The notes beneath the pieces were generated by a model. That model had not been told where the DNA came from, searched no databases, and saw only the letters and a program-made list of their open reading frames with translations. From assembly GCF_021869535.1 (NCBI RefSeq), contig NW_026262668.1, forward strand, positions 31,124,001 through 31,188,000: 64,000 nt of DNA. Reading direction: 5' to 3'. Of this stretch, positions 11,771 through 33,900 are shown piece after piece. Numbering within the stretch: the stretch's first letter is position 1; each line of letters begins with the position of its first letter. This DNA comes from Mytilus californianus. Taxonomy: Eukaryota. The position numbers were made by a program, and so were the translations under genes.

Positions 11771-13258
11771 CACTCCAAAAAAAAAAAATGAAACACATAA
11801 TGGATTTTTAAGAATTTCAGTACATGTATTTTTAATGGAAATTTTACAATTACTAATGAAGATATTCCCTTAAAACGTGTTTGATTGAGAAGAGGACAGT
11901 CTATTCCTTCGAGATTGATAAATAAAAGTCAATTTATCACAATTATAGTTACTTCCGGTGCCATTAAAGTACCGTGTATGACCACCTCTCTCTGCTAAGA
12001 CTGCTACGCATCTCCTCGGCATGGATGCTATCAATGTTCTAATGTTGTTGCGTGGAATTGCTCGCCTTTTCTGTTGCAATATTTGTCGGAGCTGATCCAG
12101 GGTCTAAGGCGGGGGTTGACGCTGGCTCACACGTTTATCCAGTTGGTCTCGTAGATGCTCAATAGGATTCAAGTCCGGTGATTTGGAAGGCCAAAGTAGC
12201 ACATTGATGTTATTCTGCTGAAGATGGTCCATTGTTAAACGCGCTGTGTGAGGCCTAGCATTGTCCTGCTGGAATAACTCTTCCTGACGGTCAATAGCAT
12301 GCATAAGGTGAGGTTGGAGAATTTCGTCTCTGTACCTTTGAGCCGTTAAATTACCCGGAACATGTACCAATTTCGTTTAACGGTCATTAGAGATAGCCTC
12401 CCACATCATGACACTTCCTCCACCGAAGCTGTCCACTTCTTGGACACAGGAGGAAGCAAAACGTTCATTCATGCGCAGGTTACGAGTTCTTCCATCACGT
12501 TTCTTAAGCATAAAACGGGACTCATCACTGAACCAGATTCTGCGCCAGTTGCGGAATGTCCAGCCCCCGATCTGTTGCGCCATCGGACTCTATTCCGTCT
12601 ATGTAACGGCCTCAAACGTGTCCAAAATACGACCTCCTTGGTCGAATGCCATGTTGTTGCAGTCGATTACGGACTGTTTGTGAGCTGATTCTTCTCAATC
12701 CTTTATCCCAACTGCAGTGGCTGTTGCGGCAACGGTTTCGTAGATAAAATACCCGGATGAAGCGATCTTGGCCAGGAGTTGTTTGGCGAGGTCGTCCGCT
12801 CCTCGAGCGGTCCTTAGTACAGACAGTCTGCTGGTAACTGTTCCAAAGTCGCGAAATTGTGCTCTGGTTAACATTTTCAGTTCTATCTACTTCTCATTGG
12901 GACACTCCGGCCTGGAGACGGCCGATGACGATATTTCGAAGAAAAGGGTCCAACCTTGGCATGACAGCGTTTTAAAATGTGATGAATTAAATCTTTAAAC
13001 AAGGTCATTATATGCGCAAAAGTGTAACAGTTGAGTTGACCACAAAATTCTCGTGAATAAAGTTAGCAAAAGTTCTCGGGGAGAAAGGTCATATGCACTT
13101 TTAGCGACAGAGAGCTAAATCAAAACAACGGGCATTTATAGTTTAAAGCTTACCTGTAAAAATTCGAAGATGCAATTGACCGTTTCATTTTACCTTGTAA
13201 AATATATATTTTGGATTTTGAAAAATTCAACCCAGCTAGGCGTTTTATTTTTACAGTA
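11771..13258 (-). mobile_element. Tc1-family (DD34E) DNA transposon, ~1.5 kb, transposase pseudogene at ~11968-12962
   Basis: MPRL... N-terminal HTH region with RSGRPR, then WFSDESRF, QQDNARPH and WPSKSPDLNPIEH (34 residues between D and E). TA precedes CACTCC at the left end; the right TIR is degenerate. Confidence 0.9.
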
Positions 13259-15108: not shown

Positions 15109-15313
15109 ATGTCGACATTATCGGACAAAGAAGAAAATTATCTTCAATTGATCAGGCTGTTAAACAATTTTGCCATGCCAGCTTTGAGATTAAAATTTAA
15201 TCAGTATTTTCCTCCATCATTACTGACTGCCATATTAAAAAGAGAAGAGTCTAGACTTAAAGCCATGAGAATATTAACTGGAAAGCAGATGAAACTATTG
15301 TATCCAGCAACAG
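15109..15313 (+). CDS. HEPN-STAND-ankyrin protein, exon 1 (N-terminal part of DZIP3/hRUL138-like HEPN domain)
   Basis: ATG at 15109; MSTLSDKEENYLQLIRLL...QMKLLYPAT-G; phase-1 donor GTATAT at 15314. Confidence 0.8.
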
Positions 15314-15419
15314 GTATATATACTTTAAGTTATCTGATTAAAATCGTCCACCTGTGTCAATATTTAGGAAAAAATCAAATTATGAGGCAGACTTTTAAGT
15401 GTCGGTAATATCCTCTTAA

Positions 15420-17201: not shown

Positions 17202-17431
17202 GTGTGTCAGTTTCTGACGACTTCGACATCACACTAATGGTATGTCTCTTGCGTAATCTAACAAACATTGTACCACCAGTCAATGGATTTGATGTTCTTC
17301 CTCCAAATCATGATGTATGTGAAGGAGCAGACCTAGCAAGAATAAAATATTACCGGAATTTTGTATCCCATGAAAACAGAGGCAAACTTCCAACACACCA
17401 GTACAACGATATATGGGCAGATTTAGTGTCG
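17202..17431 (+). CDS. HEPN-STAND-ankyrin protein, exon 2 (HEPN core with RxxxxH)
   Basis: Acceptor TTTAAAG, phase 1 matching exon 1; FDITLMVCLLRNL...ADLARIKYYRNFVSH (RNFVSH at 17354-17371); phase-0 donor GTATGT at 17432. Confidence 0.85.
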
Positions 17432-18519: not shown

Positions 18520-20440
18520 ACAAGTACAAAGTTGAAGAGCATTGAGGACCAAAAGTTCCAAAAAGTTGTGACTAATACGGCTAAGGTTTTCTGTCTGAGA
18601 TAAGAACATCCTTATTATCTAGAATAATTCATACTTTTGCAAACAGTAAATTTATAAAAATGACTATATAATAGATATACATGATAACACCGAAGTGGTG
18701 ACTAACTACAGAATAAAAACGGATACATAAAACAACATAAACCAGCACATAAAAATTCACAGCCGAGTTAGCCAAAGAAACCAACGCACAAAGCGACGTC
18801 ACATTTGAATTTCTAAAAATTTCCCCAAAATAGGATAAAATTAGGATAGAATTCAAGATTAGGTTTGTAATACTCATATAACATTTATTATTAACAATGA
18901 AAATTACAATACTAATTAATATAAAATTGTGGTAGTAATTAGATAATTAATTGTATTATCTAGCTATGTCGGTGTTTCTTCTAAATCAAACTGTAAACCA
19001 AATATATCGTATAAGTTTAGTTGACCCAAACTAAAATCTAATAAATGAACTGGGTGATTAATTATCTTTACCATAACACCCGAATACAACAGAAGAAAAT
19101 AAGATTTACAACTACAAACGATAAGACAATTGACAAAATCCGATGAGAATAACAAATATAACATCAAAACTAAATACATGAATTTTGGATAGAAAAGTAC
19201 CGTGACACGTACCCGCGTCTTATAGCAATGCGAATTCACACTCAGCAAAACAGTCACAATCGGGAATAAGTCACGTTCGGTAATTAAAAGATCAGACGAC
19301 GTAATGTCAAACCACAATCTAACACGTGGTAAAAATGTCCTTAGTTAGTTTGGACAAAGACAAATCGTATGGATCAACCTATTCGTGATGGTGTCCGTAA
19401 AATTTACGGAGTGTCATTTTTAATCTGTCCTCCTCATAACTTTGTTGGAGCAGTTTCTGCGTTAGGAGCACACTCCTGTATATGAAGTCCGTATAGTGTG
19501 AACATGCACGAGCATAACGTATCAACTGAGATATGTAAACACCATACGAAGGGGCAGAGGGTATGTTACTGCTGAGAAATGGGAAATTGATAATTGGGAA
19601 GTTGAAATCGTCCCGTTTATCATAGATTTTCGTGTAAAGTCGTCCATCTGTGTCAATATTGAGGAAAAGATCAAGGTATGAAGCAGTCCTTCTTGTATCA
19701 GTAGTATCCTTAATTTCAAGTTCACTGGGATATATGAGATGTAAGTATTTCGCAAGGTGCTTTTTCTTTTTGCCTTTTAGAAGGTTCTGAATGAATTCTG
19801 CTTCATACGAGTACAAAAACAAACCGGCCAGTAGGGGTGCACAATTAGTACCCATTGGAATACCGACTGTCTGTTGAAATATAAATCCTCCAAACTCAAC
19901 AAATATATTGTCGATCAAAAAGTCCAGCATTTTGATAATATAATCTTCAGTATATTTTCTGGTAGATTCAGTGTGGTTCTTCACAAAATATGAATTATTG
20001 TAACCGAAAACAAGAAATTTGTATCTACGATTCCCATTTTTTATAGAAAAAGCTCTGTTTAATGAGATGGTGAAGTCGATCTTTCAATTGAGCATGGGGA
20101 ATAGTAGTGTAAAGCGTAGAAAAATCAAAAGTCTTTATGTTGCTGCAAAATTGCAAAGATTGTGATAGAAAATTAAGCAGTAGATCTTTCGAATTTTTGA
20201 GAATCCACATCTGGTTAACACCACTATACACATCACAATATTTTTGAAGCCCATATTTAACTGTAGAAAGAATAGTACTTTAGAAAGATGTTTAGTCGAA
20301 CATTTTGATGACCTAGCTATGTATCGTTCTTTATATGGAGTTTTGTGAAGTTTTGGTATCCAGTATAATGATGGTAAATTTTCTTCGTTTTCTTTGATGT
20401 TGATACCCCTTGTTGAAAGTTTGTTTTGATAATGAAAAAT
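18520..20440 (-). mobile_element. Second Naiad-type PLE in intron 2: 5'-truncated RT (19319-20440) with the YIDD motif deleted, plus 3' region
   Basis: YWIPKLHK, TFDFSTLYT, GIPMGTNCAPLLA, YGVYISQLIRYARAC. The 3' region ends in sequence (18520-18720) shared with the hammerhead-bearing repeats. Confidence 0.85.
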
Positions 20441-21129
20441 ATATAAAATCTTAATAGTAGGGTACATTTTCCCTGTTGTTTAGATCGGAAGTACATGTTT
20501 TTGTACTACCAAACTTCCAGGAACCAGTGCGCTCTAATATGCATTTAAAGCAAATTAAAGGTATGTTGAATTTTCCAGCACAAGCCATTAATAAGGTATA
20601 GTTTTGAAATGAAATGACTGCCACTTTATTTGAACTTAACGAGTCTTGTGTAGACAAAAGGCACGTTTGTAATTATATCTTTTATATTATTGTCAAATAA
20701 TGTGTTTAATCTAGATAGAGATTTATGAAACCTACTACATGTAGGTACTATTTCAATCGTTTAATATGTAAACAGAATAATGTTTAAAGTCCTTCACTGC
20801 AAATGCTTGGTCTATGTCTGACTTCAAACAATTAAGATCATAGTGGAGAGTTTAACGGAAATTTTGGGAATTTTAAAACAGAAACGAAATCCATTTGCAT
20901 ACATGTTTATTTAGATTGATAGTCTTTATGTTTTAACAAATTAAATATATACATAAATAACTTGAAACAAAATGGAGCGGCGTCACTAAAATGAGATAAT
21001 TTTTAAAAAGCAAAATAAAATATGCTATTTTTATGGAAAACGAATGATTTCCTTTTGTGACAAAGTATGTTAAGATTGTGTCGTATTTTATACACTAGTT
21101 TTCATCAATTATGAAACATGTACTTATAG

Positions 21130-21214
21130 GCTGTGGCTCGTCTCAATCCTACTATGCAAGTACTTTGTGATAGGTTGAAATTAGAGAAGCTGAAAACAGA
21201 GTGTCAGTGTCATG
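21130..21214 (+). CDS. HEPN-STAND-ankyrin protein, exon 3 (end of HEPN domain / linker)
   Basis: Acceptor TTATAG, phase 0; AVARLNPTMQVLCDRLKLEKLKTECQCH; phase-1 donor GTAAGA at 21215. Phases match exons 2 and 4. Confidence 0.75.
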
Positions 21215-22520: not shown

Positions 22521-25500
22521 AAAACATGAAAAATTAAGCTGCTTCTGTCCTCAGTTCTAATGACTGTTTAACAAAATAGCCGATTAGTTTCACATGTTCT
22601 GTAGATATAGGGTTTAATATTTTAATAACTTTTTGGTCTTTTGGAAGTGACATAAATTCGTTTTCCCATTTTAATTTTGTAAACAGATCCAATCTTAATT
22701 TATTATTTATTCAACACTCCACAACTCTAAATTTTACAAAAGTTTAAATGAACTTTTTCAGTGGGAGTTTTGTCTATAAAATAGAATGGATCCAAATTTT
22801 TCCCACTTTTTTCAGCCCGAATTGTAGCCCTGTGATAGGTCAAATAACTATTCATATATGAAATTTCTGAGTTGTAAGTCAACACAGGGCGTACTAATGT
22901 GTCAAAAAGATTATTTGACACATGCATAGGAAGATTTGCCAGAGAGGAAGATTTAGCTTTTATAGAAAACACGTCAAGACTATTTTGGCCTTTCTAGCAG
23001 ATCCTCTAAACTATGATTCAGGGTACCATTACTTTTAAGTAGCGAACCTAAAAACTTGTATTCAGTAACATTTTGTAAAAAAATATTTTTATAATTAATA
23101 AATGATTCCACATTACTATTACTGTAATGTTGAATAACCATACTTTTGTTTTTTTTAATATTGAGCGTGAGCTTCCAGTTATCACAAAAAACACTCAGGT
23201 TATTTACACTGTTTTGAAGACCTTCTTTACTCTCTGAGAGTAAAATTAAATCATCAGCAAATAAAAGGGATCCAACGTTTAAATCAACTAATTTAGGTGG
23301 CTTAGAGTCTTCATTTGTAGTGACTTGCACTTAATCATTAATAAAAATATTGAAAAGAGTGGTACTGATAGAGTCCCCCTGTTTGACTCCTCTGAATGTT
23401 TTAAATGAGCTTGTACAAAGATTATTCAGTTTCAGAGCTGTTTCAGTTCTAGAAAATTGATTTTTTATTACATTAAATAAATTCTTCCAAACCCCAATTT
23501 TTGCTAATTTATTAAGCAATCGATTTCTCCATACTGAATCAAATGCTTTTTGTAAATCTATAAAGCATATAAAAAGTTTTCTTTTATTCTGATGTATATA
23601 TCTATTAATGATAGTTTTCAAAATCAATAAACTGTCTGAGGTTTTGTGATCTTTCCTGAATCCAAACTGAGAGTTTGAATATTTATCTTTCATTAAAGAT
23701 GTTAGCCTCTTATTCATGACAGCACTAAATAATTTTGAAATACAATTCACAAGTGATATTCCTCTATAATTAGATGGGTCAGACTTACTCCCAGACTTAT
23801 GAAGAAGAGTTAAATAAGATTTATTCCACTGTGCTGGATAAATTCCAGTTTTCAATATCAAGCTAAATAATTTTGAAATAGAAGTCAATGTAACAAGCCT
23901 GCTGTGTTTAATTATTTCATTTATGATGCAATCTGGTCCACTGGTTTTCCCTTTCTTTAATTTATTCAATACAAGCTTAATTTCCATTATTGTTATAGAT
24001 TTATCTGTCTCAGAATTGTATGAGAGACTTTTTTCAAAGTTAAGTAAACTATCATTTATAGTAATTTCAAAATTTTTATTTTCATCAACACAAATTCCTT
24101 GATCTTGAACATGTTTTATAGTTTTATCAATATCTTCAAGTAATTCTTTTATACCGTCCTCTTGGTCTTCATCTTTATCTTCAAGAGATCTCAAAATTTT
24201 CCAAAATTCTGCGGAATTGCTCTGTAGAGTATTTAAAGGTTTAGCACACTACAGTTCTTTATATTCCCTCTTTTTCTGTTTAACATTTTTCTTGAAAGAC
24301 TAAGTTATAAAAGTATCTCTGTTTTAGATTGTTATTAAATGGCTCTATCCTTATTTGGCTTGAAAGTGAGTTAGGAACTTTCTTTTGTTCATAAATAGAA
24401 TAATTTGACCATTTTTGTTTTATTATTTTCCTTTTCTTTTCTTTTTTCTTTTAGGTCTTACCATTTTACAAGACTCATCCGCTATATCACAAAACAATTA
24501 ATTTAGATCTTCTGTAGCTTCGTCGACTCCTTTTTGATTTTCAGAAAAAGAATTATTTTCAAAATCAATAATTTTTCATTGCATATTTTCACTAGAAAGT
24601 GCATCAATAATTTTATAACTTGATTCATTTGACCACTTATAACCTTTGGTTGCATTCCAGCCAGTAAAAATTTAGTGTTTAAAATTTTCTTGTTTGAAAT
24701 TGCATTTTACCATCACTTTAATTTGAGCATGGTCGGACAAATAGTTAAAATCTTGAGTAATAAAATAAAGAACTGAGGAAAGAAGACTTTCACTTATTAT
24801 GGCATAATCAACACTACTTAAGCCATTTTGAGTCAAACAAGTTAAAAATCCTAATGAGTCACCTAAATACCTGCCATTTAGTATTCTGAGTCTAGAAGAC
24901 ACACACATATCTAATAAATGTTTACCATGATTATTAAATTTTTTGTCTTGATTATTTCTTTTCAGGACTTAATCTATAAGATAATTTTGCGGTAATACAT
25001 TTCTTTCACAAAAATCATTTAAATCTATAGAATCATTTGTGATATAACCAGGATTTAGACTTGTTCGTGAATTAAAATCACCAATGAAGAGAATTTTCCC
25101 TCTATTTGCAAAAAAAACCTAATTTCATTTTCTAAAGATTCGAAATAATTTTCATAATGATTTGAATTTGATGGGGGTATGTAAACTGTACATAAATATA
25201 AATCTTTATCAAAACCAAAAATGTTTCTATCAAGTTTTAACCAAAGTCTATTTTCAGATGTGGTTCCTTTTTCTACATATGTTATACCTTTAGATAATGT
25301 TTTTCTGTATAATACAATTATACCACTACTATTCCTTCTTGCTTTCTTTTTTTTTCTTTCTACATTTAGATATTGAAACATAATCTGGTAGATTAGTTTT
25401 TTGATTAACTCCAGTCCATGTTTCTGTAAGAATATTAATATCACTGTTTAATTTTTCCAAAAATAATTGATCATTCATTTTATCACCCAAACCACGAACA

Positions 25501-26900
25501 TTCCAGGCAGATATAGATAGCTGACTCAAGTTTGTATTCATATTTAAACGATTTAGTATTAAACTTGTAATGGACAAGAAATCAAATATGACTGAAATCT
25601 ATTAACCTATTAATTTTTTGTATACATTCATTTTTATACATATAAAGAGAGATAACTCTGTTTTTCTATTTGTTAAGTAACTTGGTATGTTTTGAGTAAT
25701 TTATGAATATTTTTTTTAATTAAACAATTAACCATAAAAGAAATGTGATTACAAAATTATAAAATACAAACACTTTGAAAGAGGTTTTCCTACATTTCAA
25801 ATCATCATGATCATACCATGGTGATTATTTCCTCTCAAGCTAAAATGCTATAAAAATATATATGTTTTTTTTATTTATTTCTCAATTCGAACATCTATTA
25901 TTATGTAATTTTCTTCCCTGAAATATTTTTGTTCTGCTCTTTCAGAGCCGTCTCTGGATATAAACATAGTATGTTCTAAATTGTTGAAAATGGGGAGTAC
26001 AGTGTATTTATTAAAACAAAGCAAAATAATGTTAATACAAATGTCTATACCTTTACACATATAAACTACATTTACTTGTTATTTCTATATTGGGTTTCTT
26101 AAAACAATTATTTAAGCATCAATCCCTGAAAAAGTTATCAAATTTATAAAATGACATGTTTAAATGTTTAAAGAAAATTAACTACTAACAAAACTGTCTT
26201 GTAACACATCTTAAACACAAGCAAAACTATAATTTTCTATCTTGACCCATGCCATTTTCTGTCATGTAATAATATTTGAAGTAAGTTATAAATGTTATCA
26301 TCGTTACTACTTCCCGAATACTGATTTCTAGTGTCATACGTGTTCCTCCAATTCTGGTGATTTTAGCTCCTACTAGATAGCGGCACTTGTTTTAGCCTAT
26401 TATCATATGTAGTGTAGCCTTTGTCTGCAAAGTTCTGATTTGTATAATTGTTTGCATAGAAGAATGGCTTTCCATAGCTTTTTGAGTTCTTGGTTTGGTT
26501 TACCACAGACTTCAAGTTTCTAACATAGTTTTTTATACCATTTTCATTTAGGTGAATTCCATCATAGTAGTCCCTTTGATGCATGTCTTCAAAATATATC
26601 AGTTTCAAATCCCTATCATGACATTTTTTTAACAGGATATTAAATTGACATCGTTTAATTTCATATTCTTCTGTTTTGTAATGTTCCCTATAAAAACGGT
26701 GTAAAATTTGTCCAAGAACAATTTTGGACTCTGGATAATTTCTAGTTATTTGTTCCACTAAGTCTTCATATTGACCAATTACCTCTTCAACGTCACCTTC
26801 TTCCGGGTCATTTGACCCTATCTGTAGCATTATAACACTTGTCTCATTGTTTATTATTATAGTTCCGTTTCATTGACAAAATTGGATGAGAAACCCAAAC
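22500..26900 (-). mobile_element. Near full-length decayed LINE (RTE-X/CR1-group) with SGNH esterase-like ORF1 and APE-RT ORF2, in intron 3
   Basis: ORF1 remnant has QIGSND...YDGIHL. APE: SISAWNVRGL, LTETW, SSVDYAI, SDHAQI. RT: NYRGISL, FIDLQKAFDSVWR, GVKQGD, LLFADDL. Several frameshifts. Clade assignment is tentative. Confidence 0.85.
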
Positions 26901-27690: not shown

Positions 27691-28263
27691 CTCCATTTAT
27701 TTATTAAAATTCATACATTTACAATTTCTCTAAATGAATCATGAATTTAAAATATCAATTTGTAGATAATTTTGGAAATGAAATGTTATTTTTTTTTAAT
27801 CATTTGAGTATTTAACAAGGTCAAAGAACCTTTATTTGTTGATCTTGTGTTCCCAATGATTTTTGAGGTTATAGTTTCTGACTTTTTATATAGTTTTTCA
27901 TTCAATATGATAAGCAAATAGAATACACTTCGTTTCAATTCGTCATCTAATGAGTCAATTTATGGTGTTCGTTATATCGTCGTTGTTGCAGATGTACTGC
28001 TGGTCACATTTCGTTTATTTGTTAATAAGATTGGTGTTTAATTTCTTAAAAATGGTTTTAATGTAAAATGGCAAAAACTTCAAATTGATTAAAATTACAC
28101 ATTTATGTGCAATGAATCTAACAAGAAGTCGTCTGAAAGTTTGCTAAAATAAAAAGTTGGTTTGAGCAAAATATTACGTCAAATTTATATGTATATTCGT
28201 CTCAGCAATGTGAGTACATTATTATAATCATCATTAAAGCAATTATTTTGTTTTTATTTACAG

Positions 28264-31200
28264 ATTCCCATCAAGTAGAAATTAACGCCTGGGAAATTAA
28301 AGATAAGTGCTTTGTTCCAACGTCTGCAGTTGAATATATATGTAATCATTTGCAAGTGAAAAATTGTATAACCGTCACAGGATTAAGAGGAATTGGAAAA
28401 TCTGTTACAATACATCATGTAGCATTAAAACTCCGAGATACAAAAGATTACATAATCATTCCTTGTCGTAGTCCTACCGAGATTCCACTTCATTTTAGAA
28501 AGGAGAGAAAAACACTTTTTGTAGTGGACGATATCTGTGGAAAATATAATATTGATATTAAGGAGGTCAATGAATGGCAAAAACATATATCAGACGAATT
28601 ATCTATTGTAAATTCAGGTGATATAAAAATTTTGACGTCAAACTGTTATAATGTCATTCAAGACCCTAGCTTCAAAACATTAAAAGTCTTAAATGACTAT
28701 GTCTATGATTTGTCTATTTCTGTTGAGGAAAAAGAAAATATTGCATTAAAATACTTACCACAAGATACTTATGAAGAAATTAAAGAATATATAGGACAGC
28801 TGGATTATTTTCCTCTTATGTGTGAGCAGTATACAACACGTCCGATAACTGATGCATTACATTTCTTTACTTATCCTTTCGACATTTTTGAAAAAGAAAT
28901 ATCTGCTATGAGAGAAGAGGACAATCTGAAATATTGTGCATTGTTTATATGTGTTCTTTTGAATGGTTTCATAAGAAAAGCAGATGTATTTTTGGATGGT
29001 TATACTTTTGCTGATGATGTTAACGCTCACAAAACAGAAATTTACGGAGCTCATTATGGAATTTCAAGAAATAAACTCCAAACACTGTTCGATCTATGTG
29101 AGCTCAATCGAGGAACATCCACTGAACGTTTATTTAAGCAATATGATTGTCTATTAAATACATACATGAAAAAGACGGGTATTTATTACCAATGTGTGCA
29201 TGACAAAATGTTTGAATTTCTGTGCTTCTACTTTGGAAAACATATGCAAAAGGATGTAATTTTACATTCCGACAGTAAAGTTATTAGGGACCATACACAT
29301 ATATTTTCCCTGAATGAAAATCATGATTTGTTTTCGATTTCAGTAGAACCAGATAATGAAAACCTATTTTTCTCCAGGATTATTAATGACATATCACAGG
29401 GAACAATTTATGATGTTTTCTGTAATAATCAAATGCAATTTAGTAGCTTTAGATCAAAATTTATAAATTTTCTTCAGTCCAATCATCAGCCAAATCTAAA
29501 AGCGTTATTGATGAACAAACAAGAAATACGGGACAACAGAACGGAACCAGTTACATCATTATATATAGTATGCAATAAAGGTTACCTGGATTTGGCTGTA
29601 TTCATATTAGACCAGACGGATAATTATTTTGACCAAAAGTTTTATCCTCTGAATGCTGCGGCTTCCGCTGGTCATTGTCATTTGATTGAGTTGATGATAT
29701 CTAATGGAGCAGATGTTAATTACCGGGATCAAAGTGGCCATACCCCTATGACTATTGCATGCATAAATAAACACAAAACAGCAGTGAAACTGCTCATCGA
29801 CAAAGGAGCTGACTTAAACAAAAGAACAAACAAAGGCCCAACTCCTTTGATGTGGGCATGCTCAAATGGTAACAAAACAATTGCCGAATTGCTTCTTACC
29901 CATGGCGCTGATATCGACAAATCTGATTACGAAGGGAAAACACCTGTGATGTGGTCCCGTAAACGCGCTGTGCATAACTTGTTCGGTTTTTTAATTTATA
30001 AAGGGGCTGATCTAAATAAATGCGACAATAATAGATGGACAACTTTGATGTGGGTATGCTTTTACGGGCTAACTGACATTGTAGACATTCTTATCTTAAA
30101 TAATGCTGATATTTTCCAGGTCAGCAACGAAGGCTGGACATCTTTCATGATAGCGTGTAAAAGTGACAAAGTTGATATTATAAAACTTCTAATTACAAAA
30201 GGAGTTGATATAAACATGAGAGATAACTTTGGTCAAACAGCATTAATGATGGCATGCACGGAAGGACACGTTAATGTAGTCAATATTTTAATTGAAAACA
30301 AAGTCGATATAGACTGTTGTGATAAATATGGAGTTACTCCATTGATTGCAGTATGCTCTCAAGGACAATTACTTTTAGCAAGTATACTATTAAAGGGCAA
30401 GGCTGATTGCAATAAAGCTGATAATGAAGGCTGGACTCCTCTAATGGCATCCTGTTTTAGTAATAATTACAAACTCACAAAGTTATTAGTTCAACATGGA
30501 GCTTATCTTAATCAAAGCAACAAGGACGGTGAAAGTGCTCTTTTGGTTGCATGCATGGGTGTTATAAACAGAAAAATTGCGTTTTTCGTTGACACAGGAG
30601 TTTACCTGAAGTCTTACGACAATGTTGATAAACGTGACCCCTGCAATAACGATGTTGCACTGTCAATTATCAAATTTCTACTAAAAAGAGGGGCCAATAT
30701 AGATCAAGCAGATAAGGACGGTTGGTCACCATTAATGTGGGCTTGCAAAAACAATTATTTAGAGATAGCGTCTTTGCTCATTGAAAAGGGGGCTGATATG
30801 AATAATGTTTCTTCTGATGGAAACACGGGGACGTCGATTCTACAAATGGCATTAGACGAAGAAAAAATGGATATGGTTAAATTGCTCTTTAATAGAGAGA
30901 TAAATGAACTGAAAGAGCTCATACAAGCAATCAAAAGCAACGACATGAACACGCTCGAGTTTTTAATTGATGATAAAATAAGATGCTTTCAAGAAAATTA
31001 TGAGAATGCTAGATTTTGGTGTCAATTAAACCTTGTTAACAAGAAAAGTTTGAATTTGATAAACGGGTGTGATGATCAAGGTAACAGCCCTCTTTATATA
31101 TCTTGTCGAGAAGGAAATATTGAAATAACAGAGTTCTTAATCAACAGAGGGGCCAACGTTAACTTGTCTTTCTGTGACGGCTCAACAGCTCTGGGAGCTG

Positions 31201-33032
31201 TGTATTCACAAAATACAGAACTTGTAGAACTTTTGATAAAAGCCGGGGCACATGTATACCCAGCGCTAGTACGTGCATTTAAATTACAACAAACAGCCAA
31301 AATCAACCTCTTACTTGACAAAATGCCTAAAATATGTTTGAATGATATGGTCGATAAATATTGTAAATATCACAAAACTGGTTCTGATGATTCGTTAATA
31401 GAAAACGGAACAGATATTGACTACAGCATTGTAAAAAAAATACACTGGTTAGCAGAGTCCATTGAACCCTCAACATGTTCAACAGCTCTAATATTATCAT
31501 GTCAAAATAGTAAAATAAATGTTACCAGAGCTCTGATCGAATTTGGAGCAGATGTTAATATTTCGTCAGAAAATAAAATAACTCCATTAATGTATGCAAG
31601 TTGTTATTCAAATGAAGCTATTGTACGTATGCTTGTAGAAAGACAGGCGAATGTCAATGACATTGATTCGAATGGCTGGAATGTTTTAAGATGGGCATTT
31701 CAAGGACAAAATATGTATAATGTGGATTACTTAATTGATAGTGGTGCCAATATTGAAACAACTTTTATATGTGCAATAAGAAACCAGGATTCGTGGATCA
31801 TTGATACGTTAGTGAAAAGAGGTACGCATTTAGACAGATTACTAGCTATCTCATGTGAATATGGAGATACAAGTTTGGTTGATTTATTACTTTGTAATGG
31901 TGCTAATATTCATTATCAAAATGACAACATGATGACACCTTTAATGACAGCTTGTAAGTTCGGAAACAAAGCCATCATTGACATATTGGTTGAACGAGGG
32001 TCTTCTGTTAATAACGCTCTTCTGACTGCAGTTAGATTAGGAGAAAGTTCCTTAGCAAAATGTTTAATTGAAAGTGGTGGAGATTTAAATTACATTTTTC
32101 TTGAATTGTGTGACAGAAAAGACAGAAGAGCACAAAACCAACTACTTTCACACGGTGTAAATATAAATAAAGTTCTCCATACCGCATGTTGCTCTAATGA
32201 TGTCCATGCTGTGAAACAAGTTCTGACTTTTGAAATTGACATCAATAAATGCAATAAAGAAGGTTTCACTCCTTTAATGACAGCTTGTTGGTATTCAACC
32301 GACGAAATATTTCAGATTTTAGTGAGGGATGGTTACGCCAACATTTTTCAATCACTTGTTTGTGCTTATGATAAAAAAGGGTTTTCCTTTTGTAAAATAC
32401 TATGTGCAAAATGCAAAAATGAAGATTTGGTCAAAACACTATTTGAGGCATCAGAAATTGGACATTATGAAATCATGCAGCTTCTAATTGAAAAGAAAAT
32501 TAACTTGAATCAAAACAATGAAAAGGATGATTCGCCTTTAACGATAGCATGTAGAATCGAGTATAACGCTCTTGTAGAATTACTGATAAAAAATGGAGCG
32601 GACACTGGTATGGCATTTATATCGGCTTTCAGACTAAATAAAGTGAGCACAGCTAAGTTATTGATAGAATGTGGTGCTGATGTAAACAAAGTTGATCCTA
32701 TTGAATGGAGTCCGCTGATATGGGCATGTTTTATCAGACAAGAATACATTACGAATGGCGAGAGTGTGTCGTCAGATTTTGATAGTATAATCGATCTTCT
32801 TATTTCACATGGCGCGGACGTTAACCTTGCTCTAAAAAAAGTATGTGAGAAAAAATTCGAAATTGATAGAGACAGCACTATCGAGTTACTTATTAACAAA
32901 GGAGCTGACATAAACCACCGTGACGAAAATGGTTGCAAACTGCTGACATTGTTGAAAAGAGATGGCAATGAACAATGTTTGAAACTTCTTGCGTTATACG
33001 GACGAAAAAAGAAAACATGCATCATAATGTAA
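28264..33032 (+). CDS. HEPN-STAND-ankyrin protein, exon 4: STAND-type NTPase (nSTAND3-like), more than 20 ankyrin repeats, polybasic CaaX terminus
   Basis: Open for 4.8 kb. Acceptor TTTACAG, phase 1. Walker A GLRGIGKS (28380-28403), Walker B LFVVDD (28515-28532), VHDKMFEF (HD-type) motif, repeated TPLMxAC...GADxN units, ends GRKKKTCIIM*. Confidence 0.92.
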
Positions 33033-33739
33033 AATAGAAACCTAACTATTTTATGATTTTAGTATTTTAATATCATTATATAATAGCATTTGTTTTTGAG
33101 ATAGGGATTAAGTCATTTTTTTTTAGTTAACATTTCATTGATTGATAATATATAATTACTTTTTTATTAACGTTATTTTCGAGGCAAAATAGAATACGAA
33201 CATGAAGAGCATTGCTGAAACATAATCCTAATGGTTTAAAAAAAAAGAACAGTGACATCCGCATTTTTTTAATAGTTCACGTGTGTTTCATTTTAATTAT
33301 CACCGAGACCAAGCAGTGACTATTAAGTGTTACAATTCAAATTGAGACAGTAACCGAAAAGGTACCGCCATTTGATATAATATGCTGATACAAATGAAAT
33401 AAAATATACACATACAAAATAAGGAGAGGTGGTTTACATGCCGATTAGACAACTATCCATCTACCAAAAACAAAGATGAAAACAATACCAGCCTGGGCCT
33501 TAGCCGGTCAACAAGTCATATACCTGCTCCGATTTGAAAAATAAATGACAAGGACTTGTCAGGACTGAGACGTTGTTATTGGTAACGTTGCTTTACGTTT
33601 TGTTTTAACTTTGGTTTTATGATGTTATGTCATTGTTAAGAGTATAATTGTAGTGATACTTAGCATCAAGGTAAAATGCTTCAATAAAGAAGTGCTCCAT
33701 GTCTTCCCGGTTTAAATCTCTTTCTTTGTAACATTGAAA

Positions 33740-33900
33740 TATAAAATAAGGAGATTTGGTATGATTGCAAATGATACAACTCCTAAGCAGATACCAATGA
33801 CGTAGATGATAGCAACTATAGGTCACCTTACGGCCTTCAACAATGACCCAAACTAATACCACATAGCAATCTATAATAGGCCTCGACATAAACAAAATGT
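33740..33900 (+). repeat. Dispersed short repeat family (GAGATGTGGTATGATTGCCAATGAGACAACT core)
   Basis: Related copies at ~33415, ~40450 (+), ~43270 and ~57690-57780 (-). Confidence 0.6.

What the first reader, a model, noticed from the sequence alone, without database searches (positions are those of the whole stretch)
33000..33032. K-Ras-like polybasic CaaX box on the HEPN-STAND-ankyrin protein
Seen: the protein ends GRKKKT-CIIM-stop. Known: C-aliphatic-aliphatic-Met is a farnesyltransferase substrate, and an adjacent lysine run directs prenylated proteins to the plasma membrane (K-Ras4B ends KKKKKKSKTKCVIM). Inference: the sensor end of this NLR-like RNase is lipid-anchored at the inner membrane leaflet. 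I do not know of this combination being described for animal STAND receptors.
Basis: partly seen in the sequence, partly recalled or inferred. Interest (0 to 1): 0.75.

Follow-up and report, generated by a model that had tools for sequence, protein, structure and literature searches.

The report
Conserved prenylation tail on mussel STAND protein
A mussel gene for a large immune-receptor-like protein (RNase-type head, ATPase switch, about 30 ankyrin repeats) ends in a lipid-attachment signal identical to that of human K-Ras4A, and relatives keep this signal, so these proteins probably work tethered to a membrane, though no experiment or transcript yet shows it.

Summary
Window 33000-33032 reads G-RKKKT-CIIM-stop, at the end of an intact 4-exon, 1762-codon gene: DZIP3-type HEPN, nSTAND3 NTPase, about 30 ankyrin repeats. 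The genome is Mytilus californianus-like.

The box is probably not chance. Seven tails of this clade, from at least four Mytilus sources, keep Cys at -4, an aliphatic a2, X = M or T, the same stop position and 3-5 basic residues. These copies are 58-67% identical, with dS up to 0.8 and synonymous changes inside the box. A deeper relative ends CVLQ at the homologous place.

A second clade with the same architecture ends CC-[ST]-I-[TSI] after a fast-diverging 45-residue linker. That is a palmitoyl-Cys second signal in place of the basic one, as in Ras isoforms.

CIIM is K-Ras4A's proven CaaX box. The basic patch (net +3 to +5) resembles K-Ras4A or Rho tails, not K-Ras4B, so "plasma membrane inner leaflet" is over-specific.

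No RNA support was found for the window gene, and two own-genome paralogues carry a frameshift or a nonsense codon. Lipidated STAND receptors (NOD1/2, NLRP3) and prenylated immune proteins (GBPs, OAS1 p46) are known. I found no report of a CaaX-prenylated STAND NTPase.

Verdict: new variant of a known kind, untested at the bench.

The parts
15109..15313 (+). Exon 1: start codon and first part of the DZIP3-type HEPN domain; donor GT at 15314
   Evidence: tblastn with the N-terminus of the M. californianus paralogue P0004 gives 55% identity over residues 1-69. Pfam HEPN_DZIP3 profile positions 1-36 match here. Donor GTATAT.
17202..17431 (+). Exon 2: main part of HEPN_DZIP3, with the Rx4H motif RNFVSH at 17354-17371
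   Evidence: Pfam PF18738, 78.5 bits against a cut-off of 27, profile positions 39-114. Motif coordinates verified. AG acceptor and GTATGT donor.
21130..21214 (+). Exon 3: short linker exon (AVARLNPTMQVLCDRLKLEKLKTECQCH)
   Evidence: tblastn to P0004 residues 144-170. AG acceptor, GTAAGA donor, and the phases fit.
28264..33032 (+). Exon 4: nSTAND3 NTPase, helical region, about 30 ankyrin repeats, basic patch, CaaX box and stop
   Evidence: Open frame of 1588 codons. The spliced CDS of 5286 nt has no stop. Acceptor tttacag|AT.
28311..28757 (+). nSTAND3 P-loop NTPase domain, with Walker A GLRGIGKS at 28380-28403 and Walker B LFVVDD at 28515-28532
   Evidence: Pfam PF20720, 71.4 bits against a cut-off of 27.2. 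Motifs verified.
29559..32999 (+). Ankyrin-repeat solenoid, about 30 repeats
   Evidence: Pfam Ank_2, Ank, Ank_4 and related models, E down to 2e-143, with 9-11 stretches of up to 3 repeats each. The AF2 model of the last 200 aa is a helical repeat stack with pLDDT 85-96.
33003..33017 (+). Basic patch R-K-K-K-T directly before the CaaX cysteine
   Evidence: Homologues have 3-5 K/R and no acidic residue in the same six positions.
33018..33029 (+). CaaX box C-I-I-M (Cys1759 of the 1762-aa model), the predicted farnesylation site
   Evidence: Cys and a1 are invariant in the 6-row alignment. TGC/TGT and ATC/ATT synonymous variants occur inside the box. The last 7 residues have pLDDT below 50, i.e. 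a flexible tail.
33030..33032 (+). Stop codon TAA, at the same position relative to the Cys in all homologues

Best explanation
The last ten residues, RKKKT-CIIM, are a functional two-part membrane-targeting signal. The gene is Mytilus-specific and encodes DZIP3-type HEPN, an nSTAND3 NTPase and about 30 ankyrin repeats. Inferred mechanism: cytosolic farnesyltransferase attaches a C15 isoprenoid to Cys1759. The -IIM tripeptide is then probably removed and the new C-terminus methylated. The weak farnesyl anchor acts together with the adjacent +4 basic patch to hold the ankyrin end on acidic cytosolic membrane faces, either the plasma membrane or endocytic and other endomembranes. The NTPase switch and the HEPN head face the cytosol. 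Shown here: the motif, its exact position, the gene model, its conservation, and its recurrence in related clades. Inferred: lipid attachment, which membrane, and any immune or RNase role.
For: (1) The motif is exact and canonical. CIIM is the CaaX box of K-Ras4A, a proven FTase/Rce1 substrate (PMC5874806 table 1). K-Ras4A also has a short basic KIKK motif directly before it that helps membrane targeting (PMC8479197).

(2) It is conserved in every clade member whose end is readable. Own-genome paralogues end RIKTK-CILM and RKQKK-CIIM. Two Logan genomic contigs end RQKTK-CIIT and RKKKK-CIVM. M. coruscus ends RKKKK-CIIM. NCBI XP_063415818.1 ends RRKQKK-CTVM. These copies are only 58-67% identical.

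(3) Six nucleotide differences fall within the five terminal codons, and all of them preserve a prenylation box and the stop. Only 44-56% of single-base changes would do so. With dS of 0.26-0.83 between copies and a gene-wide dN/dS of 0.31-0.36, I estimate about 10 motif-breaking hits under neutrality.

(4) A deeper relative, P0282 (41% identity in the NTPase region), ends CVLQ at the homologous place and groups with the window clade at 100/99 support.

(5) There is an independent replicate. A second HEPN-nSTAND3-ankyrin clade ends CCSIT in M. edulis, M. galloprovincialis and one own-genome copy, CCSII in a second own-genome copy, and CCTIS in a Logan protein. The 45-residue linker before the box diverges and carries a 20-residue indel. 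This is the Cys-next-to-CaaX arrangement of yeast Ras2 (its CIIS box: PMC5874806 table 1; the preceding Cys is from memory).

(6) The tail is predicted to be flexible, with pLDDT below 50 for the last 7 residues.

(7) The genome encodes prenyltransferase beta subunits at three loci, alpha-subunit PPTA repeats, and ICMT.

(8) Gnomon models of two homologues (P0001, P0280) use this same terminal exon and end at the CaaX.
Against: There is no direct evidence of lipidation. No transcript was seen: the one raw RNA-seq run of the species label gave essentially zero depth on exon 4, though only 6% of the run was read and the tissue is unknown. The window's protein is absent from the 5.8-billion-protein collection, so it appears unannotated. 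An alternative 3' exon cannot be excluded for this copy.

In the last 88 columns, 47% of positions are invariant. The invariance of Cys and Ile is therefore only modestly above the local background. My rough estimate is P about 0.04 against the protein's own average constraint.

Two of the three own-genome copies are damaged: a frameshift in C79a, and an in-frame TAG 88 codons before the tail in C79b. The M. coruscus copy is only a 3' fragment, and the M. edulis copy is degraded and lacks the tail. Part of the conservation therefore comes from possibly dead genes.

Most other nSTAND3 proteins lack a CaaX. Rce1 was not detected by the exon-wise Pfam search (inconclusive).
Confidence: 0.6

Rival explanations
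1. Phylogenetic inertia or chance. The CaaX-like end is an unused by-product of the last ankyrin repeat's sequence. It persists only because the copies are young or the whole C-terminal region is constrained for folding.
For: 47% of the last 88 alignment columns are invariant. A CaaX-like tetrapeptide occurs at 0.26% of positions in these proteins. Several copies that carry the tail are damaged genes.
Against: dS between copies reaches 0.65-0.83, yet every change in the five terminal codons keeps a valid box and the stop. The tail lies outside the confidently folded repeat. A second clade keeps CC-aaX at the end of a rapidly diverging, indel-bearing linker. P0282 keeps CVLQ at 41% identity.
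Confidence: 0.15
2. The tail is functional, but not as a farnesyl anchor to the plasma membrane. RKKK could act mainly as a nuclear localisation or protein-binding patch. The Cys could be geranylgeranylated or only S-acylated, which would send the protein to other compartments.
For: RKKK fits a monopartite NLS pattern (my own knowledge). An upstream polybasic region increases dual FTase/GGTase-I specificity (Hicks et al. 2005, listed as ref 42 in PMC11121372). Farnesyl alone gives only weak, non-specific membrane affinity, and the reference plasma-membrane charge probe is farnesylated with net charge +8 (PMC11392533 introduction and results; PMC8479197). Net charge here is only +3 to +5, and P0282 has no basic patch at all.
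Against: X = M or T with a2 = I/L/V is the classical FTase class (PMC11121372 introduction). The basic residues shift position but never include an acidic residue, and they always abut the Cys. That pattern fits an electrostatic second signal better than a fixed NLS.
Confidence: 0.15
3. The window copy is a silent or recently dead gene. The signal matters, or mattered, in the family, but this locus makes no protein.
For: No RNA-seq cover. No matching protein in public collections. Both paralogues in the same genome carry a disabling lesion. The introns are packed with retroelement ORFs on the opposite strand.
Against: The CDS is 1762 codons over four exons without a stop or frameshift, in an AT-rich genome. 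It has canonical GT-AG sites with matching phases, and intact Walker A/B and Rx4H motifs. dN/dS against relatives is about 0.33. Only 6% of one RNA run of unknown tissue was read.
Confidence: 0.2

Closest known systems
K-Ras4A C-terminus (KIKK-CIIM) and other Ras/Rho hypervariable tails
   Same: The CaaX tetrapeptide CIIM is identical, and a short basic motif sits directly before the cysteine. The logic of farnesyl plus a second signal is the same. The sister clade uses a Cys next to the CaaX, like the palmitoylated Ras isoforms (PMC5874806 table 1; PMC8479197; PMC11392533).
   Different: The tail sits on a 1762-aa STAND/ankyrin protein, not on a small GTPase. No palmitoylatable Cys lies near the box in the window clade. 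There are far fewer basic residues than K-Ras4B's hexalysine. There is no homology outside the last few residues.
Prenylated innate-immune proteins: GBP1/2/5 and the OAS1 p46 isoform
   Same: These are cytosolic defence proteins whose activity depends on a C-terminal CaaX box that places them on pathogen or replication-organelle membranes. Human GBP1 also needs a triple-arginine patch just upstream. The CaaX box is gained and lost between lineages (PMC7082077; PMC10683996; PMC12091997).
   Different: GBPs are dynamin-like GTPases and OAS1 is a nucleotidyltransferase. Neither is a STAND NTPase with repeat arrays or a HEPN domain.
Lipidated STAND receptors: S-palmitoylated NOD1/NOD2, and NLRP3 (polybasic region plus S-acylated Cys130)
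   Same: These are animal STAND NTPases whose function needs lipid-mediated membrane recruitment. NLRP3 combines a polybasic stretch with a lipidated cysteine (PMC8385166; PMC11392533).
   Different: There the lipid is a reversible thioester acyl group added by ZDHHC enzymes at internal sites. Here it would be an irreversible C-terminal isoprenoid at the repeat end. The NTPase clade also differs: NACHT there, nSTAND3 here.
DZIP3/hRUL138-type HEPN fusions in lineage-specific expansions of marine invertebrates
   Same: The same HEPN family is already catalogued as fused to ankyrin repeats, NACHT ATPases, DEATH/CARD and LRR domains, with expansions in oyster and Nematostella (PMC3710099 table). 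HEPN, STAND and ankyrin combinations in bivalves are discussed as immune or apoptotic modules (PMC8195603).
   Different: Neither paper mentions prenylation. PMC8195603 has 0 occurrences of 'prenyl'. PMC3710099 was searched only for DZIP3, hRUL138 and STAND.
Legionella AnkB (F-box, ankyrin repeats, CaaX)
   Same: An ankyrin-repeat protein anchored to a membrane by farnesylation of a C-terminal CaaX, carried out by the host (PMC2916131; PMC5506055).
   Different: AnkB is a small bacterial effector with no NTPase or HEPN domain. The mussel gene has introns and is an endogenous animal gene.

Membership tests
CaaX-box prenylation substrates (farnesyltransferase class) | Cysteine exactly four residues from the free C-terminus | tested here: met
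   TGC at 33018-33020, followed by three codons and TAA. The spacing is the same in all seven clade tails.
CaaX-box prenylation substrates (farnesyltransferase class) | a1/a2 aliphatic, and X = M, S, Q, A, C or T (FTase) rather than L or F (GGTase-I) | tested here: met
   The window has I-I-M. Homologues have I-L-M, I-I-T, I-V-M and T-V-M. CIIM is the K-Ras4A box (PMC5874806 table 1).
CaaX-box prenylation substrates (farnesyltransferase class) | Accessible, unstructured C-terminal tail | tested here: inconclusive
   In the AF2 model the last 7 residues have pLDDT below 50 and the preceding 20 about 62. Only about 9 residues follow the last ankyrin helix. Low confidence does not prove disorder.
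CaaX-box prenylation substrates (farnesyltransferase class) | Processing enzymes present in the organism | tested here: inconclusive
   The prenyltransferase beta family is found at 3 loci, PPTA alpha repeats at 2-3 loci and ICMT at one locus. Rce1-like PF02517 was not found by the exon-wise search, which does not show absence. I did not establish which beta locus is FNTB.
CaaX-box prenylation substrates (farnesyltransferase class) | Covalent isoprenoid on the cysteine | not testable with these tools
   This needs metabolic labelling, an in vitro FTase assay or mass spectrometry.
K-Ras4B-type polybasic second signal | A long lysine run (six contiguous Lys, net about +8) next to the farnesyl-Cys | tested here: not met
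   There are four basic residues in the window tail and 3-5 in homologues. K-Ras4B has a hexalysine (PMC8479197). The tail resembles K-Ras4A's KIKK instead.
DZIP3/hRUL138-type HEPN domain | Pfam PF18738 above its gathering score, with the Rx4-6H motif | tested here: met
   78.5 bits against a cut-off of 27 on exon 2, with exon 1 supplying profile positions 1-36. RNFVSH lies at 17354-17371. RNase activity itself was not tested.
STAND NTPase, nSTAND3 clade | Pfam PF20720 above cut-off, with intact Walker A and Walker B | tested here: met
   71.4 bits against a cut-off of 27.2. GLRGIGKS and LFVVDD are intact. 882 relatives were found at E<=1e-3.
NLR in the strict sense (NACHT or NB-ARC plus LRR) | A NACHT or NB-ARC NTPase domain with a leucine-rich-repeat C-terminus | tested here: not met
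   Pfam finds nSTAND3 and ankyrin repeats only, with no NACHT, NB-ARC or LRR. The protein is NLR-like in architecture, not a member.

The most novel reading that the evidence does not exclude
Mytilus mussels may have evolved a set of prenyl-anchored STAND NTPases with HEPN RNase heads. These would use Ras-style two-signal address codes: farnesyl plus a basic patch in one clade, farnesyl plus a palmitoylatable Cys in another, and a bare CaaX or a CaaL-type box in others. The codes would station different paralogues on different cytosolic membrane faces, such as the plasma membrane, endosomes, Golgi, or virus replication organelles and pathogen vacuoles. That would be a membrane-patrolling arm of invertebrate cell-autonomous immunity, analogous to prenylated OAS1 and the GBPs, but built on a STAND switch.
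Probability: 0.3. Interest if true: 0.8.

Novelty: new variant of a known kind. Interest (0 to 1): 0.55.

Why it matters
Where a cytosolic immune receptor sits decides what it can sense. NOD1/2, NLRP3, the GBPs and OAS1 p46 all depend on lipid-mediated membrane recruitment. If these mussel proteins are farnesylated, they would be the first CaaX-anchored STAND NTPases that I could find any trace of.

Sister clades with a 'polybasic' and a 'CC' version would form a natural experiment. It would show how address codes diversify within an expanded invertebrate immune gene family of at least 616 nSTAND3 candidate loci in this genome.

The idea is cheap to test, with GFP-tail fusions, C-to-S mutants and farnesyltransferase inhibitors. 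It also gives a handle on the otherwise uncharacterised HEPN-nSTAND3-ankyrin proteins of bivalves.

Tried and rejected
1. RNA evidence. The look-up of sequencing runs found no RNA holder. I laid one raw RNA-seq run (6% read) and three contig sets on 27900-33800. There was no cover of exon 4 and no joints. The only signal was a roughly 39-nt dispersed repeat at 33743-33781. This says nothing for or against an alternative last exon.

2. Word-index protein search with the NTPase region returned only 3 proteins. The exhaustive representative search was needed to reach relatives.

3. M. edulis hit P0122/L013 turned out to be a frameshifted, rearranged copy that ends in a different repeat. I count it as a broken homologue, not as an intact gene lacking the motif.

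4. M. coruscus P0121/L014 is only a 155-codon 3' fragment with stops upstream. It shows sequence conservation but is weak evidence of function.

5. The Rce1 Pfam search of the own genome was blank. This is likely a limit of exon-wise scoring for a membrane protein, so I rate it inconclusive.

6. 'K-Ras4B-like' is rejected in favour of 'K-Ras4A/Rho-like' on charge count.

7. A single origin of the CaaX in the family is rejected by the tree, which needs at least 3 changes and places the CaaX rows in separate starred clades.

8. Only 21 of at least 616 nSTAND3 candidates were scored by the tool. The genome-wide frequency of CaaX ends could therefore not be measured.

9. Complex prediction was not used, because no protein-protein binding claim is made.

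Full report
**Observation**

Window 33000-33032 on the + strand reads GGA CGA AAA AAG AAA ACA TGC ATC ATA ATG TAA, that is G-R-K-K-K-T-C-I-I-M-stop. It ends a 1588-codon open exon.

**Gene model**

- The big exon begins at a polypyrimidine/AG acceptor at 28264.
- I mapped the N-terminus of the NCBI paralogue P0004 (named Mytilus californianus). This located three upstream exons: 15109-15313, 17202-17431 and 21130-21214.
- All four junctions are GT...AG and the phases fit. The spliced CDS is 5286 nt, or 1762 codons, without a stop.
- Pfam gives HEPN_DZIP3 split across exons 1 and 2 (profile positions 1-36 and 39-114; 78.5 bits), which supports that join.
- On exon 4 Pfam gives nSTAND3 (71.4 bits) followed by about 30 ankyrin repeats.
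- The HEPN Rx4H motif (RNFVSH), Walker A (GLRGIGKS) and Walker B (LFVVDD) are all intact.
'NLR-like' is true of the architecture only, since there is no NACHT, NB-ARC or LRR.
- This architecture class is already catalogued for DZIP3-type HEPN domains in oyster and cnidarian expansions (PMC3710099 table; PMC8195603).
- The genome is 1.65 Gb in 175 contigs, and the paralogues are named Mytilus californianus in NCBI.

**Is the tail more than chance?**

Taken alone, it is not clearly so. In 282 proteins of this family, a CaaX-like tetrapeptide occurs at 0.26% of positions. With a basic, acid-free patch before it, the rate is 4.5e-5. The test is conservation.

| Source | Tail |
|---|---|
| Window gene | RKKKT-CIIM |
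| Own-genome paralogue C79a | RIKTK-CILM |
| Own-genome paralogue C79b | RKQKK-CIIM |
| Logan genomic contig L011 | RQKTK-CIIT |
| Logan genomic contig L012 | RKKKK-CIVM |
| M. coruscus P0121 | RKKKK-CIIM |
| NCBI XP_063415818.1 (P0280) | RRKQKK-CTVM |

- Overall identity of these copies to the window protein is 58-67%.
- In the five copies with DNA in hand, the five terminal codons differ at six nucleotide positions: TGC/TGT, ATC/ATT, ATA/TTA/GTA, ATG/ACG and TAA/TAG. Every variant keeps a valid box and the stop.
- Only 44-56% of single-base changes would keep the box.
- Pairwise dS is 0.26-0.83 and dN/dS is 0.31-0.36.
- With a summed neutral tree length of about 1.5, I estimate about 10 motif-breaking hits under neutrality (P about 1e-4). 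Under the protein's own average constraint I estimate about 3 (P about 0.04). These are rough hand estimates.
- The basic residues move about but always number 3-5 of the six positions, with no acidic residue. That is what selection on charge rather than on sequence looks like.
- AlphaFold2 on the last 200 residues gives a confident ankyrin stack, with the last seven residues below pLDDT 50.

**Wider family**

This part changed my view most.

- An exhaustive HMMER search with the NTPase region found 882 relatives.
- Among the 150 best representatives, two had a strict CaaX. Both belong to one other clade with the same HEPN-nSTAND3-ankyrin architecture.
- Its tails are ...HSCCSIT in M. edulis XP_071178430.1 and M. 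galloprovincialis VDI12374.1, and ...NACCTIS in a Logan protein.
- Two tandem own-genome copies on C154 end ...QSCCSIT and ...YSCCSII.
- In this clade the box ends a 45-residue linker that is poorly conserved and carries a 20-residue indel. The CC-x-I-x end is nevertheless invariant in place.
- A cysteine next to the CaaX cysteine is the classical palmitoylation second signal. Yeast Ras2's box is listed as CIIS in PMC5874806; the preceding Cys is from my memory. The general logic is set out in PMC11392533 and PMC8479197.
- A cluster mate of a closer relative, P0282 (41% identity in the NTPase region), ends ...QESKCVLQ. Its tail aligns with the window clade's tail.
- One of 15 other intact own-genome nSTAND3 ORFs that I sampled ends ...SRRCTFL.
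- On a maximum-likelihood tree of the NTPase regions, the CaaX-bearing rows fall into three separate well-supported clades. At least three changes of state are needed. The window clade plus P0282 has 100/99 support and all four rows are CaaX.
- Prenylation boxes therefore recur in this family with different second signals. That is hard to explain unless they are used.

**Machinery**

| Component | Result in own genome |
|---|---|
| Prenyltransferase beta-subunit family | Three loci (my own knowledge: three is the number expected for FTase, GGTase-I and RabGGTase) |
| PPTA alpha-subunit repeats | 2-3 loci |
| ICMT | Present |
| Rce1-like family | Not picked up by the exon-wise scan; no evidence of absence |

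**Limits**

- *Expression is unproven.* No indexed RNA run holds the stretch. The one raw RNA-seq run of the species label, with 6% of it read, gave no cover of exon 4. The window's protein is absent from the protein collection.
- *The family turns over fast.* C79a has a frameshift inside the big exon. C79b has an in-frame TAG 88 codons before its intact CaaX tail, so the NCBI model P0004 stops there. The M. coruscus copy is only a 3' fragment. An M. edulis copy is frameshifted, rearranged and without the tail.
- *The local background is high.* 47% of the last 88 columns are invariant anyway.
- *Most nSTAND3 proteins lack the box.* That covers 0 of 117 distant ankyrin hits, 148 of the 150 nearest representatives, and 14 of 15 sampled own-genome ORFs.

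CIIM is K-Ras4A's box (PMC5874806). K-Ras4A has KIKK directly before it, which contributes to membrane targeting (PMC8479197). K-Ras4B's signal is six contiguous lysines (PMC8479197). Farnesyl alone gives weak, non-specific membrane affinity. A farnesylated +8 probe goes to the plasma membrane (PMC11392533).

With net +3 to +5, the mussel tails sit between these cases. The destination could be the plasma membrane, endocytic membranes or other endomembranes. Oligomerisation of a STAND protein would multiply the anchors and raise avidity; that is my inference.

'Lipid-anchored' is therefore reasonably supported. 'Inner leaflet of the plasma membrane' and 'K-Ras-like' in the 4B sense are not.

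**Known relatives of the idea**

- S-palmitoylated NOD1/NOD2 (PMC8385166).
- NLRP3, with a polybasic region plus S-acylated Cys130 (PMC11392533).
- Prenylated GBP1/2/5, where human GBP1 also needs a triple-arginine patch upstream of the CaaX (PMC7082077; PMC12091997).
- Prenylated OAS1 p46, whose CaaX is lost in some lineages (PMC10683996).
- Legionella AnkB, a farnesylated ankyrin protein (PMC2916131).

Full-text searches for CaaX or prenylation together with NLR, STAND or NACHT returned no natural CaaX-bearing STAND receptor. The bivalve/STAND paper does not mention prenylation.

**Verdict**

This is a new variant of a known kind, namely lipid-addressed cytosolic immune-type receptors. The comparative evidence for it is moderate. 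It is untested biochemically, and the window copy has no expression evidence.

Noticed in passing
G000:C79:8906985-8906987 (L003/L004, L018) and G000:C79 about 8725245-8725254 (L017): Both own-genome paralogues of the window gene carry a single disabling lesion. C79b has an in-frame TAG 88 codons before an otherwise intact CaaX tail, and NCBI model P0004 ends there. C79a has a frameshift inside the big exon, so NCBI model P0001 is ankyrin-only plus CaaX. This could be birth-and-death turnover, or natural CaaX-less and NTPase-less variants.
   Followed up: partly
L019 (G000:C154:97321015-97324668) and L020 (G000:C154:97290695-97294333): Two tandem genes about 30 kb apart belong to a second HEPN-nSTAND3-ankyrin clade. 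They end ...QSCCSIT and ...YSCCSII. This is a CaaX with an adjacent Cys at the end of a diverging linker, and it is conserved in M. edulis and M. galloprovincialis.
   Followed up: partly
L031, L032, L035, L036, L037 (G000:C35 26.12-26.43 Mb and 45.87 Mb; G000:C57 10.54 Mb): Other nSTAND3 ORFs end in other possible membrane-directed tails. Two are strongly basic without Cys (...KRSRRNFKKSKH, ...RKRRRRNSKKK). One is a CaaL-type box (...SRRCTFL). Two are very hydrophobic (...LSLCVICISTFYILLYFD, ...LLLWFWDILSLFL). The hydrophobic ends may be read-through into introns; the exon ends were not checked.
   Followed up: no
window 33743-33781: A roughly 39-nt element downstream of the gene draws very high depth in the RNA run and in contigs of two organisms (summed depth 300-430), with loose ends on both sides. 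It is a dispersed short repeat, not part of the gene.
   Followed up: no
window 31523-32268 (contigs of runs X1/X2, 'organism A'): Contigs about 94-95% identical to exon 4 come from another organism label. One contig has an extra T behind 31762. That would shift the frame in that organism's copy if it is real, but the depth is only about 5.
   Followed up: no
window 19379-20496 (-), 22534-25577 (-) and 12104-12583 (-): Introns 2 and 3 and the upstream flank hold ORFs on the opposite strand that look by eye like retroelement or transposase remnants: reverse-transcriptase-like ORFs at 19379-19984 and 23331-24194, an endonuclease-like ORF at 25055-25577, and Tc1/mariner-like pieces at 12104-12583. 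None was run against Pfam.
   Followed up: no
G000:C88:31365151-31371634 (-): A multi-exon prenyltransferase beta-subunit gene lies about 180 kb downstream of the window on the same contig. This is probably coincidence. Which of the three beta subunits it encodes was not determined.
   Followed up: no
L013 (M. edulis CAJPWZ010001777.1:546249-559348, reversed): This is a degraded clade-a copy. Pieces matching residues 323-724 and 1370-1509 of the window protein are present and the middle is missing. After a frameshift near the tail, the reading frame continues into a different ankyrin repeat and there is no CaaX.
   Followed up: partly
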